Positions 26,326 to 29,721 of a stretch of DNA of 41,449 nucleotides are shown piece by piece. The notes beneath the pieces were generated by a model, which searched no databases, was not told where the DNA came from, and saw only the letters and a program-made list of their open reading frames with translations. The position numbers and the translations under genes were made by a program. Within the stretch, counting starts at the first letter, position 1, and each line of letters begins with the position of its first letter. The stretch comes from Prasinococcaceae sp. CCMP 1430 (taxonomy: Eukaryota; Plantae; Prasinodermophyta), in NCBI GenBank assembly GCA_013416795.1, contig RQSC01000204.1:7592-49040 (forward strand), written 5' to 3'.

Positions 26326-29300
26326 TCAGCCGAGCCTCAGCGCGCGGATGTTGCCCAGCGAGTTCGCGGCGAGCAGCACATTGTCACGCTGGCGCCAGCA
26401 CACGGCCGACACGAATTGCCCTGCCTCGTCGGCCGTGTCCTGGCCGACGATGGGGTCGGTGCCATGGAAATGCGCCGAACCTAGCGGCGTGGGCAGCGCG
26501 CGAAAGTAGACGTATACGTTGTTGTCCTCCGAGCCGCACGCAATATAGCCCTCCTTGTTCACGGACAGCCCCACAAAGTTCTTCTCGTTGATGTGCCCCG
26601 TGAAGGTCCGCTCACACTCGATCTGGTTGCCCGCGTTGGACGTCAAGCCCCCGCGATTGATGTCCCACAGCTTCAGCGTGTTGTCAGTCGAGGCACTCAC
26701 CACGCGCTGGCCGTCAACAAATGACACGTAGCTGACGGCCTTGTTGTGACCCGCCATCACGAACAGTGGGACGCTTGGCTTGCGCAGGTCGTAGTAGTAC
26801 AGCTTGTAGTCCGCGGAGCCAAAGGCAATCTGGTGCGGGTCGAGCGGGTTGAACTGCACGCAGCACACGTTGGCGTGGCTATTGATCGTCATCACGCTGG
26901 AATCCTGTAGCATGCTCCACACCTTGACGAGGCCGTCATCGCTCCCGCTGATGAGACGCATGGGGTCCGCTGGCGAGAACCCCACGCTCCAGACACGCTT
27001 GCTGTGCTCGTCGTACGCCTTGGTGGGTTTCTGCGTCGACACGTCCCAGATGTGCACCATTCCGTCGTAGTCCGAGGACGCCAGGTGGTTCTTGACGTAC
27101 GGGTTCCATGCGATGCTGCTCAGCTTGCTCTGGCTGCTCATTTCCACCACGGGGAAATTCATGCCCACCCCGGGCCGCTCCATGATGGACCCAAACTCGA
27201 AGACTTTGATCTTTTTGCATACGCCAGCGGTGGCAAAGTACTCTTCGTCGCGATCAAATCCAAGGGAACAGACCATGTTGGCGCTGTTCATCACCCCCCC
27301 GTGCTTGAGCGTCGGTCCAACCTCCAGCCTGCTGTACTTGACGAACTTGGTGAGGTCCTCAGCGAATGTAGGGAGGTGGTCCACGGGGCGGTCAAGAATC
27401 AGCGAGCCGAGCCCCGCGGCGGGGGCGGCTGCCCCCGCCGCCTGCGGCCACGCGGAGGTCGAGGCCCCCTTGGCCGCCCTGGCGTTTTGCGCATTCTTCC
27501 CAAGCGCGGCCCTTCGCACGCGGAAGAAGGCCTCTTGCAACTGGCCCAGGCCCTGGCCCGCAGCAAGCGAATTGCGGAGCATCGAGTTCCCCATGCTGTA
27601 CGACTCATGTCCGACGGGCTGCTTGCGCACCTCCTCGAGCGTCGGCAGGTTGGGGGCGGTGCCCAGTTTGGAGAAGCGGCGCTCCACCTCGAGGATGTCA
27701 GCGTCGATTTGTTTGACCTCCTCCGCGAGCCTACGCGCGCGCGCGCGCTTGGCCTCTTGCTGCTGCTCCAGAAAGTCGAGGCATAGCTCGTGCAGCAGCG
27801 CATGCTCATCGATCTCGAGCAGCGCCCCGCGCTGTGCCAGCGCCTCCTTGGCCTCCTCCAGCACTGCGTCGCTCCCGGTCATGTCGACGGTGGGCCGCGC
27901 GTCCGGGTCTGGATGGAGCAGCCGCAGGATGAAGGTGGCCTCGCGTGGCCGGTCCTCCAGCAGCTCCGGGGGCAGGATACGCATGCGAAGGTCCGCTAGG
28001 AGTTGCTCGCGCTGCTCAAGCGAGCGGTGCGCCGCCATGAGGTCGAAGAAAAGGACGCCAAGTGCATACACATCCGCCGCCGGCGAGGGTTCCTCTCCGT
28101 TGGCAACCTCGGGTGCACGATACCAGTCCTCCTCGCTCATACCGCTACCGAGGTTGCGACGCTGCGCGCGCATGCGCTGTGACCCCCCCGAGGAGGCTGC
28201 GCCTCCATTGACTGGTCGGCAGAGCGCATCACCATATCCCAAAGGAGGAAGCGCCTGTTCACGCGAAGACAGGGTTCGCTGTTCCATTGGCAGCCGCGCT
28301 TCACGCAAACCGTCCGCCTCGGATGGCTGCGCGCGTGCCAGCACTGCCGGTTGGCGACCCATCGGAGCGTCGGTGGCCTGCTGCGGTTGCAGCTGTGAGC
28401 CAGCGGGTCCCGCCCCATCTCGCTGCAGGTGTTGCGCTCGGGCTCCTTCCGTAAAAGACGAGGGGCGCGGCGACGACGGAGTGGGATTGAGAAACGAGAC
28501 ACGCCCGTTTGGGAACACGCGCAGCAACGATGGTCGCACGCAGCCTAGGATCGCACCGCGCTTGTGCGCCTCTCTGACGAGCTCGACGACGTTCCTGAAG
28601 GCGTGCAGACGATCCACCTTGTCTAGCATGGCATCGTCCGACAGAATGACGTCGCGAAGCGTGACGCACGGTGCGTCGCCGTCGTCCCCATCACGGGCGG
28701 CCGCGTGAGGTAGTGGGCGGGCGAGCTCGCCGGGGCGATGGAGTGCCCGAGCTGCTCGCAGCGTCGAAGCCAGCAATTCGTCGAACGATTCGTGCTCCCA
28801 CGAGCCCTCGTCTGACGTCGCCAGCTGCCGCTGCTGCCGCCGGTCCGGCTGCAGCTGCTCTGCCCGCTCCTGCTGCTGCTCCGCCTGCTGCCCATGCCGC
28901 TGCGGGTCTGGTTGCGCACGCCCGCCGCCACCTCCGTGCCCCCCACTGGCGTCGACGCCATTCGCGCCACCCGCCTCGGCCGCGACAGCAGCGGCCTTGC
29001 CACCCGTGCCATCAAGCCGCTGGCGTTTCGCGGCCCTCTCCCTGTCGTCGCCAATAAGTGACAGTACTGCCTCGCGCGGTGGGCTCATTTGACCCTGCCC
29101 AGCCTCGACTTTGCTGCGCGTGCGCGCCAACGCGGGCCCGGTGTCGGGCACAGGGATGGCATCCGTCGGCTCCTGTGCACCCTCTTCGGCGCCCGCGATG
29201 CTCGCGGGCCGCGGCTCAAGAGGGGTCTTTCGTCGCCTCCACACGTGTTGCCAGATGTTCTGTAGCTCCTTCTTAGTGACGGGCTTGAGCAGGTAGTCCT

Positions 29301-29721
29301 CGGCGCCGTTCTGGATGCACGAGAACACTGTGTCCGAGTGCTCGTTGGCGCTCATCATGATCACGGGCATGGCCCCCAGCTCCTCACACTCGCGCACGTG
29401 TCGCAGCAGCTGGATGCCGTCCACACCGGGCATCATCACGTCGGTGAGAAGCAAGTGAAAATCTGCCGGCCGCTCTTGCAGCAGCGCGAGCGCCTCCTCG
29501 CCGGAGGTCGCCTGCGTGCACTTGTAGCCACACTTGCGCAGAATGTTTGACACCACGAGGCGGCTCAGCCGCTCGTCATCCACGAGGAGAACGTTGACGT
29601 CGGCGGGCGCGAGCTGCTCCAGCTTGCTCGGCGCCGGCGACAGCATAGCTGTCGAGGGCGTCCGCCCGCCAGTCGCTTGCTCGAGAGACCCGCCCATGCT
29701 ACCGAACTGTCCCATGCTCAT
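26326..29721 (-). CDS. SPA: SPA-family protein (kinase-like domain, coiled coil, COP1/SPA WD40) fused to an N-terminal response-regulator receiver domain, about 1131 aa, single ORF
   Basis: REC: VLLVDDE...LLLTDVMMP...VIMMSA...AEDYLLKPVTKKELQNIWQHVWRR. SPA kinase-like: VTLRDV...HKRGAILGCVRPS...EEDWYRAPE...ADVYALGVLFFDL...LRMRILPP...LLHPDPDARP. WD40: NSANMVCSLGFDRDEEYFATAGVCKKIKVFE, HSKRVWSVGFS, SGSDDGLVKVW, HNKAVSYV, FTGHINEKNFVGLS, GQFVSAVCWR. No RING finger. Confidence 0.93.
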   Translation of the reverse strand: MSMGQFGSMGGSLEQATGGRTPSTAMLSPAPSKLEQLAPADVNVLLVDDERLSRLVVSNILRKCGYKCTQATSGEEALALLQERPADFHLLLTDVMMPGVDGIQLLRHVRECEELGAMPVIMMSANEHSDTVFSCIQNGAEDYLLKPVTKKELQNIWQHVWRRRKTPLEPRPASIAGAEEGAQEPTDAIPVPDTGPALARTRSKVEAGQGQMSPPREAVLSLIGDDRERAAKRQRLDGTGGKAAAVAAEAGGANGVDASGGHGGGGGRAQPDPQRHGQQAEQQQERAEQLQPDRRQQRQLATSDEGSWEHESFDELLASTLRAARALHRPGELARPLPHAAARDGDDGDAPCVTLRDVILSDDAMLDKVDRLHAFRNVVELVREAHKRGAILGCVRPSLLRVFPNGRVSFLNPTPSSPRPSSFTEGARAQHLQRDGAGPAGSQLQPQQATDAPMGRQPAVLARAQPSEADGLREARLPMEQRTLSSREQALPPLGYGDALCRPVNGGAASSGGSQRMRAQRRNLGSGMSEEDWYRAPEVANGEEPSPAADVYALGVLFFDLMAAHRSLEQREQLLADLRMRILPPELLEDRPREATFILRLLHPDPDARPTVDMTGSDAVLEEAKEALAQRGALLEIDEHALLHELCLDFLEQQQEAKRARARRLAEEVKQIDADILEVERRFSKLGTAPNLPTLEEVRKQPVGHESYSMGNSMLRNSLAAGQGLGQLQEAFFRVRRAALGKNAQNARAAKGASTSAWPQAAGAAAPAAGLGSLILDRPVDHLPTFAEDLTKFVKYSRLEVGPTLKHGGVMNSANMVCSLGFDRDEEYFATAGVCKKIKVFEFGSIMERPGVGMNFPVVEMSSQSKLSSIAWNPYVKNHLASSDYDGMVHIWDVSTQKPTKAYDEHSKRVWSVGFSPADPMRLISGSDDGLVKVWSMLQDSSVMTINSHANVCCVQFNPLDPHQIAFGSADYKLYYYDLRKPSVPLFVMAGHNKAVSYVSFVDGQRVVSASTDNTLKLWDINRGGLTSNAGNQIECERTFTGHINEKNFVGLSVNKEGYIACGSEDNNVYVYFRALPTPLGSAHFHGTDPIVGQDTADEAGQFVSAVCWRQRDNVLLAANSLGNIRALRLG

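What the first reader, a model, noticed from the sequence alone, without database searches (positions are those of the whole stretch)
26326..29721. Receiver-domain-SPA fusion: candidate direct coupling of His-Asp phosphorelay to the COP1/SPA E3 ligase
Seen in sequence: one uninterrupted ORF encodes a PRR-like receiver domain (about 29601-29230), a Q/G-rich linker, a SPA-type kinase-like domain (about 28665-27890), a coiled coil and a COP1/SPA WD40 propeller (about 27300-26330). Established: land-plant SPA1-4 are kinase-like, coiled-coil, WD40 proteins with no receiver domain, and they activate COP1 to degrade HY5/CO-type factors. Photoreceptors act on them by direct binding. Inference: this alga may control SPA by Asp phosphorylation from a histidine kinase (LOV-HK and rhodopsin-HK sensors are known in prasinophytes). 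That would be a light or clock signalling route not found in flowering plants. I cannot tell whether this architecture is already reported for other algae.
Basis: partly seen in the sequence, partly recalled or inferred. Interest (0 to 1): 0.88.

Follow-up and report, generated by a model that had tools for sequence, protein, structure and literature searches.

The report
Receiver-SPA light-signalling protein, ancestral form
This gene of the early-branching marine green alga Prasinoderma coloniale encodes its SPA protein (partner of the COP1 light-signalling ubiquitin ligase) with an intact two-component receiver domain at the front; this layout was already noted for Chlamydomonas SPA1 in 2019, but finding it here suggests it is the original form of SPA.

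Summary
Window 26326-29721 (minus strand) is one 1131-codon ORF. It encodes a canonical receiver (REC), a disordered linker, a degenerate SPA-type kinase C-lobe, a long coiled coil and a COP1/SPA-type WD40 propeller.

The idea is not new. Gabilly et al. 2019 (PMC6717296) wrote that chlorophyte SPA1 carries an N-terminal CheY-like response-regulator domain absent from plant SPAs, and proposed control by a sensor histidine kinase. I found 69 proteins with a full REC ahead of a COP1/SPA-type WD40, from Chlorophyceae, Trebouxiophyceae, Cymbomonas and many marine metagenome clusters.

What this window adds:
- The genome is Prasinoderma coloniale (100% match to PRCOL_00000788), a phylum reported to branch before the Chlorophyta/Streptophyta split.
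- The phospho-acceptor Asp, the Ser and the Lys are invariant in 69/69 proteins.
- REC is the best-conserved domain: median 62% identity, against 48% for WD40.
- The streptophyte alga Chlorokybus keeps a 22-residue REC remnant.

REC-SPA is therefore probably the ancestral SPA, and streptophytes lost the receiver. Phosphotransfer and COP1 binding remain untested. Verdict: real, a new member of a known kind, moderate interest.

The parts
26326..29721 (-). Complete CDS of the REC-SPA protein (1131 aa plus stop). An alternative start at Met26 gives the 1106-aa database form.
   Evidence: It is 100% identical to residues 1081-2211 of P. coloniale PRCOL_00000788-RA, and it contains the 1106-aa UniRef form.
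29257..29592 (-). Receiver (REC) domain, residues 44-155, canonical CheY-like.
   Evidence: Pfam PF00072, E 2.5e-26. Best solved match is ARR1 at E 3e-27, then CheY. Median identity to other REC-SPA receivers is 62%.
29440..29442 (-). Codon of Asp94, the predicted phospho-acceptor.
   Evidence: It aligns with the acceptor Asp of ARR1 and CheY. It is invariant in 69/69 REC-SPA proteins, as are D48, S124 and K146.
28666..29226 (-). Low-complexity A/G/R/D/Q-rich linker, residues 166-352. It contains a basic KRQR stretch that could be a nuclear localisation signal (unverified).
   Evidence: Composition. It holds 4 of the 6 amino-acid differences to the Tara contigs but no indel.
27874..28665 (-). 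SPA-type kinase-like domain (C-lobe only), residues 353-616. A disordered insert spans about residues 414-525 (window 28147-28482).
   Evidence: It aligns with land-plant and algal SPA kinase-like domains, sharing the RPS, WYxxPE, DVYxLGVLFF(E/D)L, LRxRILPP and LLHPDP motifs. The AF2 model has pLDDT above 90 outside the insert. Foldseek matches the PERK and GCN2 kinase C-lobes at about 1.2 A over roughly 90 residues. The catalytic Asp position holds Cys, and there is no DFG and no N-lobe match.
27667..27867 (-). Coiled coil, residues 619-685.
   Evidence: Single 67-residue helix in the AF2 model, pLDDT about 82-97. This stretch is the part of the query that also matches COP1 proteins.
26332..27375 (-). 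COP1/SPA-type seven-blade WD40 propeller, residues 783-1130.
   Evidence: Matches Arabidopsis COP1 WD40 structures at E 7e-107 and human COP1 at 2e-96. The equivalents of COP1 K422, Y441 and W467 are conserved, and the SPA-type ASTDN box is present.

Best explanation
This is the single SPA (SUPPRESSOR OF PHYA-105) orthologue of Prasinoderma coloniale, in the REC-SPA layout known from chlorophyte SPA1.

The C-terminal half (kinase-like C-lobe, coiled coil, WD40) most likely works as in Chlamydomonas and plants. The coiled coil would pair it with COP1. The propeller would bind VP-motif transcription factors of the CONSTANS or HY5 type and present them to a CUL4-DDB1 ligase for degradation.

The N-terminal receiver is a working phospho-acceptor. 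A histidine kinase, probably acting through an HPt protein, would phosphorylate Asp94 and so switch the ligase subunit on or off. That would feed a light or other environmental signal straight into COP1/SPA.

Shown here: the domain identities, intact receiver chemistry, family-wide conservation, and placement in the SPA clade. Inferred: COP1 pairing, the substrates, phosphotransfer, and the direction of the switch.

Evolutionary reading: REC-SPA is the ancestral form in green plants, and the receiver was lost in streptophytes.
For: - Domains are confirmed by Pfam and PDB matches.
- The SPA-signature kinase-like motifs and the kinase C-lobe fold are present.
- In the tree of kinase-like + coiled coil + WD40 rooted on COP1, the SPA clade and the COP1 clade each have SH-aLRT 99, and the window protein lies inside SPA.
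- The COP1 clade also excludes it in the WD40-only tree.
- Receiver residues D48, D94, S124 and K146 are invariant in 69/69 proteins and D49 in 68/69.
- REC is the most conserved domain: median 62% identity, against 48% for WD40 and 37-43% for the kinase-like part.
- CrSPA1 genetics and COP1/CrCO interaction are published, and the HK-regulation idea was raised there (PMC6717296; PMC6736836).
- Other notes of this scan report hybrid histidine kinases in the same genome, including a phytochrome with an intact kinase (unchecked by me).
- Organism identity rests on a 100% match to PRCOL_00000788-RA. Its phylum is reported to branch before the Chlorophyta/Streptophyta split (PMC7455551).
- Chlorokybus SPA keeps 15/22 identical residues of REC strand 1 and helix 1.
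Against: - There is no transcript, protein or biochemical evidence for this gene.
- I could not confirm that P. coloniale has a COP1, an HPt protein or a VP-motif CONSTANS/HY5.
- The backbone of the SPA tree is unresolved. The claim that REC is ancestral therefore rests on the published species tree plus the Chlorokybus remnant, not on the gene tree.
- The Chlorokybus remnant could be a gene-model artefact in either direction.
- The receiver's role has not been tested even in Chlamydomonas, as far as the searchable literature shows.
Confidence: 0.6

Rival explanations
1. The receiver is retained but is not a regulatory input from a histidine kinase. It would serve as a constitutive dimerisation or docking module, or as a phosphate sink, or it would be phosphorylated by small-molecule donors only. 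SPA activity would then be set by direct photoreceptor binding, as in plants.
For: UVR8 co-purifies with SPA1 and COP1 in Chlamydomonas, so direct photoreceptor control exists in a REC-SPA organism (PMC6736836). No genetic lesion in the REC of CrSPA1 has been reported.
Against: All residues needed for phosphotransfer chemistry are invariant in 69/69 proteins, and REC is the best-conserved domain. A mere docking module usually lets these residues drift, as in the PRRs (established knowledge).
Confidence: 0.2
2. The protein acts without COP1. It could be a stand-alone CUL4-DDB1 substrate receptor, or a scaffold or kinase whose output is not ubiquitin ligation, with the receiver controlling that other activity.
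For: SPA1 has been reported to phosphorylate PIF1 and HY5 in Arabidopsis (titles and abstracts listed). COP1 could not be looked for in this genome.
Against: The kinase-like part lacks an N-lobe match, the catalytic Asp and DFG. The coiled coil and the VP-pocket residues shared with COP1 are conserved. SPA1 and COP1 co-purified with UVR8 and both bound CrCO in yeast two-hybrid assays in Chlamydomonas.
Confidence: 0.12
3. Gene-model artefact. Either REC and SPA are two neighbouring genes read through in a GC-rich, stop-poor sequence, or the true product is the 2211-aa Dis3-REC-SPA chimera of model PRCOL_00000788-RA.
For: Long spurious ORFs are common in this window. One published annotation does join the upstream Dis3-like ORF to this one.
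Against: The same REC-linker-kinase-like-WD40 order occurs in 69 proteins from many assemblies. CrSPA1 was amplified from cDNA as a single product of about 4.17 kb. The Dis3 junction removes a stop codon through a 'GC...GC' non-canonical intron. The UniRef form (1106 aa) and the Tara gene calls (1106 and 1131 aa) do not include Dis3.
Confidence: 0.04

Closest known systems
Chlamydomonas reinhardtii SPA1 (CrSPA1) and other chlorophyte REC-SPA proteins
   Same: Same domain order: N-terminal CheY-like receiver, kinase-like domain, coiled coil, COP1-type WD40. The receiver is 57-69% identical to those of named chlorophyte homologues. The same hypothesis of histidine-kinase control was published for CrSPA1.
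   Different: It comes from Prasinodermophyta, outside Chlorophyta. It forms its own clade with one marine metagenome relative. Its kinase-like and WD40 parts score better against streptophyte SPAs than against chlorophyte ones. I did not retrieve the CrSPA1 sequence itself; the comparison is with its relatives and with the paper's description.
Land-plant SPA1-SPA4
   Same: Kinase-like C-lobe with the same signature motifs, a coiled coil, and a WD40 with the ASTDN box and VP-pocket residues. Identity is 36-40% over about 70% of the length.
   Different: Plant SPAs have no receiver. Photoreceptors act on them by direct binding (established knowledge). Here the catalytic-loop Asp kept by Capsella SPA2 is Cys.
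COP1 (RFWD2)
   Same: WD40 propeller at E 1e-106 and a homologous coiled coil.
   Different: No RING finger. It lies outside the COP1 clade, which has 100 SH-aLRT in the WD40 tree and 99 in the longer tree. COP1 boxes read ASTDS, while this protein has the SPA-type ASTDN.
Type-B ARR receivers and pseudo-response regulators (PRR/TOC1)
   Same: Plant-type receiver with the C-terminal WQHVWRR-like tail. The best solved match is ARR1, and the alignment runs through that tail.
   Different: No Myb/GARP or CCT output domain. Unlike PRRs, it keeps the acceptor Asp and the full D-D-D-S-K set.

Membership tests
SPA (SUPPRESSOR OF PHYA-105) family | C-terminal COP1-type seven-blade WD40 propeller | tested here: met
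   Residues 783-1130 match Arabidopsis COP1 WD40 structures at E 7e-107.
SPA (SUPPRESSOR OF PHYA-105) family | Kinase-like domain with SPA signature motifs, N-terminal to the coiled coil | tested here: met
   Alignment with fern, lycophyte, angiosperm and algal SPAs. AF2 model and Foldseek show a kinase C-lobe. The Pfam Pkinase hit is sub-threshold, 29.2 against 31.7 bits.
SPA (SUPPRESSOR OF PHYA-105) family | Coiled coil between the kinase-like domain and WD40 | tested here: met
   67-residue helix at residues 619-685 in the model. The homologous stretch is shared with COP1 proteins.
SPA (SUPPRESSOR OF PHYA-105) family | Phylogenetic placement with SPAs rather than COP1; no RING | tested here: met
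   SPA clade 99 and COP1 clade 99 SH-aLRT. No RING family in the Pfam scan.
SPA (SUPPRESSOR OF PHYA-105) family | VP-motif binding pocket residues (COP1 K422, Y441, W467 equivalents) | tested here: met
   K, Y and W are conserved in the alignment to 6qto/7vgg. The residue numbering was recalled from memory and fits the K, Y and W found at those positions of the 6qto chain.
SPA (SUPPRESSOR OF PHYA-105) family | Binds COP1 and represses light-induced genes | not testable with these tools
   Needs co-immunoprecipitation or yeast two-hybrid, and genetics. COP1 of this genome was not located.
Chlorophyte-type REC-SPA1 (as described for CrSPA1) | Canonical CheY-like receiver fused at the N terminus of SPA | tested here: met
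   PF00072 at residues 44-155. The same arrangement occurs in 69 proteins. Described in PMC6717296.
Two-component response regulators (phospho-accepting receivers) | Acidic pair, acceptor Asp, Ser/Thr and Lys all present | tested here: met
   D48, D49, D94, S124 and K146 align with ARR1 and CheY. They are invariant or near-invariant across the family.
Two-component response regulators (phospho-accepting receivers) | Receives a phosphoryl group from a histidine kinase or HPt | not testable with these tools
   Needs an in vitro phosphotransfer or Phos-tag assay.
Pseudo-response regulators (PRR/TOC1) | Acceptor Asp replaced, and a CCT output domain | tested here: not met
   The acceptor Asp is present. 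There is no CCT hit in Pfam.
Catalytically competent protein kinases | N-lobe with Gly-loop and VAIK Lys, HRD catalytic Asp, and DFG | tested here: not met
   Pfam covers profile positions 161-256 only. The catalytic-loop position holds Cys (GCVRPS), and no DFG follows.

The most novel reading that the evidence does not exclude
REC-SPA is the ancestral SPA of all green plants. In the first green algae, light-sensing histidine kinases (HK-type phytochrome, LOV-HK or rhodopsin-HK) controlled COP1/SPA by His-Asp phosphorelay onto this receiver. Streptophytes later lost the receiver (Chlorokybus keeps a stub) and replaced phosphorelay with direct photoreceptor-SPA binding.
Probability: 0.3. Interest if true: 0.7.

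Novelty: new member of a known kind. Interest (0 to 1): 0.36.

Why it matters
How photoreceptors first came to control the COP1/SPA ligase is an open question in plant light signalling. A receiver bolted onto SPA is the only obvious physical link between two-component signalling and COP1/SPA.

The link was noted in one paragraph for Chlamydomonas in 2019. The literature I could search shows no follow-up.

This window shows the layout in a lineage that reportedly split off before chlorophytes and streptophytes diverged. The receiver chemistry is intact, and REC is more conserved than any other domain. That makes 'SPA began as a response regulator' a defensible and testable statement. It also moves the origin of SPA back from 'chlorophytes' (as reviewed in PMC7748024) to the base of the green plants.

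It does not reveal a new kind of system.

Tried and rejected
- Low GC at the window end is an assembly gap of Ns at 39789-40526, not biology.
- Rfam found nothing in the window.
- I tried to fetch the Chlorokybus locus to see whether the rest of REC is in the genome. The protein is not on record, so the remnant stays unresolved.
- I searched the scan's own notes for COP1, HPt and HY5 in this genome and found nothing.
- The WD40-only tree left the backbone unresolved and gave only weak support (84) for placing the window clade. The longer alignment separated SPA from COP1 but still did not order the SPA lineages.
- The PRR reading was rejected because the acceptor Asp is present and there is no CCT domain.
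- The active-kinase reading was rejected because the catalytic Asp, DFG and the N-lobe are missing.
- The Dis3-REC-SPA chimera of one annotation was rejected as probably artefactual, because of its non-canonical junction over a stop codon.
- DWD/WDxR box: the Arg/Lys sits one residue later than in COP1 (WDINR). The same offset occurs in Dendrobium SPA1 (WDLNK), so it is uninformative.
- I did not build a REC-only phylogeny against ARR-B and PRR receivers, because no reference set of those was at hand.
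Full report
**1. Observation**

The minus strand carries an open frame from 29955 to 26326. Its first ATG is at 29721, which gives 1131 residues.

- Pfam finds a Response_reg domain at residues 44-155 (E 2.5e-26).
- Pfam also finds a protein-kinase match to the C-terminal lobe only (residues 532-614, 29.2 bits, cut-off 31.7), plus WD40 repeats.
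- Against solved structures, residues 783-1130 match the WD40 propellers of Arabidopsis COP1 (E about 1e-106) and human COP1 (about 1e-96).
- The receiver matches the type-B regulator ARR1 (E 3e-27) and then CheY.

The window is about 68% GC and full of long spurious ORFs, so ORF length is no argument. The homology and the recurrence of the same domain order elsewhere are the argument.

Two Tara Oceans contigs are 99.2% identical to the window. They keep the frame over 3321 nt without an indel, and differ at 15 synonymous and 6 non-synonymous codons. Four of the six amino-acid changes lie in the linker.

**2. Anatomy**

*Receiver.* D48-D49, the acceptor D94, S124 and K146 align with the catalytic set of ARR1 and CheY. 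It is a canonical receiver, not a pseudo-receiver.

*Linker.* Residues 166-352 are low-complexity (A, G, R, D, Q rich).

*Kinase-like domain.* Residues 353-616 align with SPA proteins from ferns, Selaginella, orchids, Brassicaceae, Chlorokybus and chlorophytes, and share the family's motifs.
- An AlphaFold2 model of residues 358-710 is confident outside a disordered insert of about 110 residues.
- Foldseek matches it to the C-lobes of PERK, GCN2 and PKR at about 1.2 A over roughly 90 residues.
- There is no N-lobe match. The catalytic-loop Asp position is Cys, and no DFG follows. By sequence it is a pseudokinase remnant.

*Coiled coil.* Residues 619-685 form one 67-residue helix in the model. 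This is the stretch also shared with COP1 proteins.

*WD40 propeller.* It keeps the equivalents of COP1 K422, Y441 and W467. The numbering is from memory; it fits the residues found at those positions of the 6qto chain. It has the SPA-type ASTDN box where COP1 proteins have ASTDS. No RING is present.

**3. Family placement**

I built a tree of kinase-like C-lobe, coiled coil and WD40 from 41 proteins, rooted on COP1.
- It gives an SPA clade (SH-aLRT 99) and a COP1 clade (99).
- The window protein sits in the SPA clade with one marine metagenome relative (100).
- It is separate from core chlorophytes (99), from a large marine clade (99) and from streptophyte SPAs (91, Chlorokybus basal).
- The order of these lineages is unresolved here and in a 95-row WD40-only tree.

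**4. How common is the fusion?**

Very common in green algae outside the streptophytes.
- The first protein search already showed PF00072 together with the COP1-type propeller in Myrmecia, Coccomyxa, Elliptochloris, Trebouxia and Dunaliella.
- Later searches added Chlamydomonas eustigma, Astrephomene, Micractinium, Tetradesmus, Parachlorella, Nannochloris and Cymbomonas. They also added a cluster with a Picocystis member and many abundant marine metagenome clusters. JGI annotates some of these as 'CheY-like chemotaxis protein/WD40 repeat protein' or 'suppressor of PHYA-105 1'.
- In total, 69 proteins carry a full receiver upstream of a COP1/SPA-type propeller. In them D48, D94, S124 and K146 are invariant and D49 is present in 68.
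- Between this protein and 16 diverse REC-SPA homologues, the receiver is the best-conserved domain. Median identity is 62%, against 48% for WD40, 37-43% for the kinase-like parts and about 30% for the coiled coil.
- None of the streptophyte SPAs sampled has a full receiver. The sample covers a liverwort, a lycophyte, ferns, angiosperms and Spirogloea.
- Chlorokybus SPA has a 22-residue stretch that is 15/22 identical to receiver strand 1 and helix 1 (pairwise E 9e-9). In its gene model this stretch is joined directly to the kinase-like domain. This is either a relic or a gene model that skipped exons. I could not fetch the locus.

**5. Literature**

Gabilly et al. [quoted passage not shown] - Tokutsu et al. 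2019 (PMC6736836) amplified SPA1 from cDNA as a single product of about 4.17 kb. They also showed that SPA1 and COP1 each interact with CrCO, and that both co-purify with UVR8.
- No other paper in the searchable library links SPA to a receiver.
- A 2026 review of SPA proteins does not mention it.
- The COP1 review PMC7748024 places the origin of SPA in chlorophytes.

So the architecture and the hypothesis are published but apparently untested.

**6. Organism**

The 90%-identity cluster of this protein contains EukProt entry EP00793 Prasinoderma coloniale PRCOL_00000788-RA. Its 2211 residues match the window at 100% in three blocks.

The published genome has 69.8% GC and many selenoproteins. 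It belongs to Prasinodermophyta, reported to have diverged before the Chlorophyta/Streptophyta split (PMC7455551). The main text of that paper does not discuss SPA or photoreceptors.

The 2211-aa model joins the upstream Dis3/Rrp44-like ORF to the REC-SPA ORF. It drops the last Ala and the stop codon of Dis3, and the spliced-out segment begins and ends with GC rather than GT...AG. I read it as an annotation merge. The UniRef form is 1106 aa and starts at Met26.

**7. Mechanism and evolution**

*Most likely mechanism.* This is the alga's SPA subunit of a COP1/SPA-CUL4-DDB1 ligase. Its receiver accepts a phosphoryl group on Asp94 from a histidine kinase/HPt relay and so modulates ligase activity.
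- The domain identities and the conservation are shown.
- COP1 pairing, the substrates, phosphotransfer and the sign of the effect are inferred.
- Unchecked notes of this scan report several hybrid histidine kinases in the genome, including a phytochrome with an intact kinase.

*Evolutionary inference.* A receiver of the same type sits at the same position, about 60% identical, in Prasinodermophyta and across Chlorophyta, and Chlorokybus has a stub. A single origin in the ancestral green-plant SPA followed by loss in streptophytes is therefore the simplest reading. This leans on the published species tree, because the gene tree's backbone is unresolved.

**8. Verdict**

It is not novel in kind. 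This is a new member, in an informative lineage, of an architecture already noted for chlorophyte SPA1. Interest is moderate.

Noticed in passing
window 29724-30176 and 30170-33250 (minus strand): The EukProt model PRCOL_00000788-RA (2211 aa) fuses the upstream Dis3/Rrp44-like exoribonuclease ORF (PIN, CSD, RNB and S1 domains) to REC-SPA. The removed segment starts and ends with GC and includes the Dis3 stop codon, so this is probably an annotation merge. The merge could hide SPA in domain-architecture surveys of this genome.
   Followed up: yes
P0019 (Chlorokybus atmophyticus SPA-like, residues 81-102): A 22-residue remnant of receiver strand 1 and helix 1 (15/22 identical to the window protein) is joined directly to the kinase-like domain. 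It is either a relic of a lost REC or a gene model that skipped exons.
   Followed up: partly
window 39789-40526: A run of Ns (assembly gap). It explains the apparent drop to 34-53% GC at the end of the window.
   Followed up: yes
window 39498-39505, 40752-40759, 40781-40788: Three copies of the telomere-repeat-like 'telo-box' AAACCCTA occur in intergenic DNA either side of the gap (0.06 expected by chance). They may be a promoter element or an interstitial telomere-like repeat.
   Followed up: partly
window 1027-4290, 19273-22635, 22912-24243, 36379-38718: The neighbouring genes are ordinary, mostly intron-poor nuclear genes: a Vps34-type PI3-kinase, an importin-beta, a C3HC4 RING protein and an MA3-domain protein. 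None has an obvious functional link to SPA. The Tara contigs keep the same gene order.
   Followed up: partly
cluster of P0022: One REC-SPA cluster contains both a Picocystis entry and an entry labelled Diacronema (Pavlova) lutheri, a haptophyte. The latter is probably green-algal contamination of that assembly.
   Followed up: no
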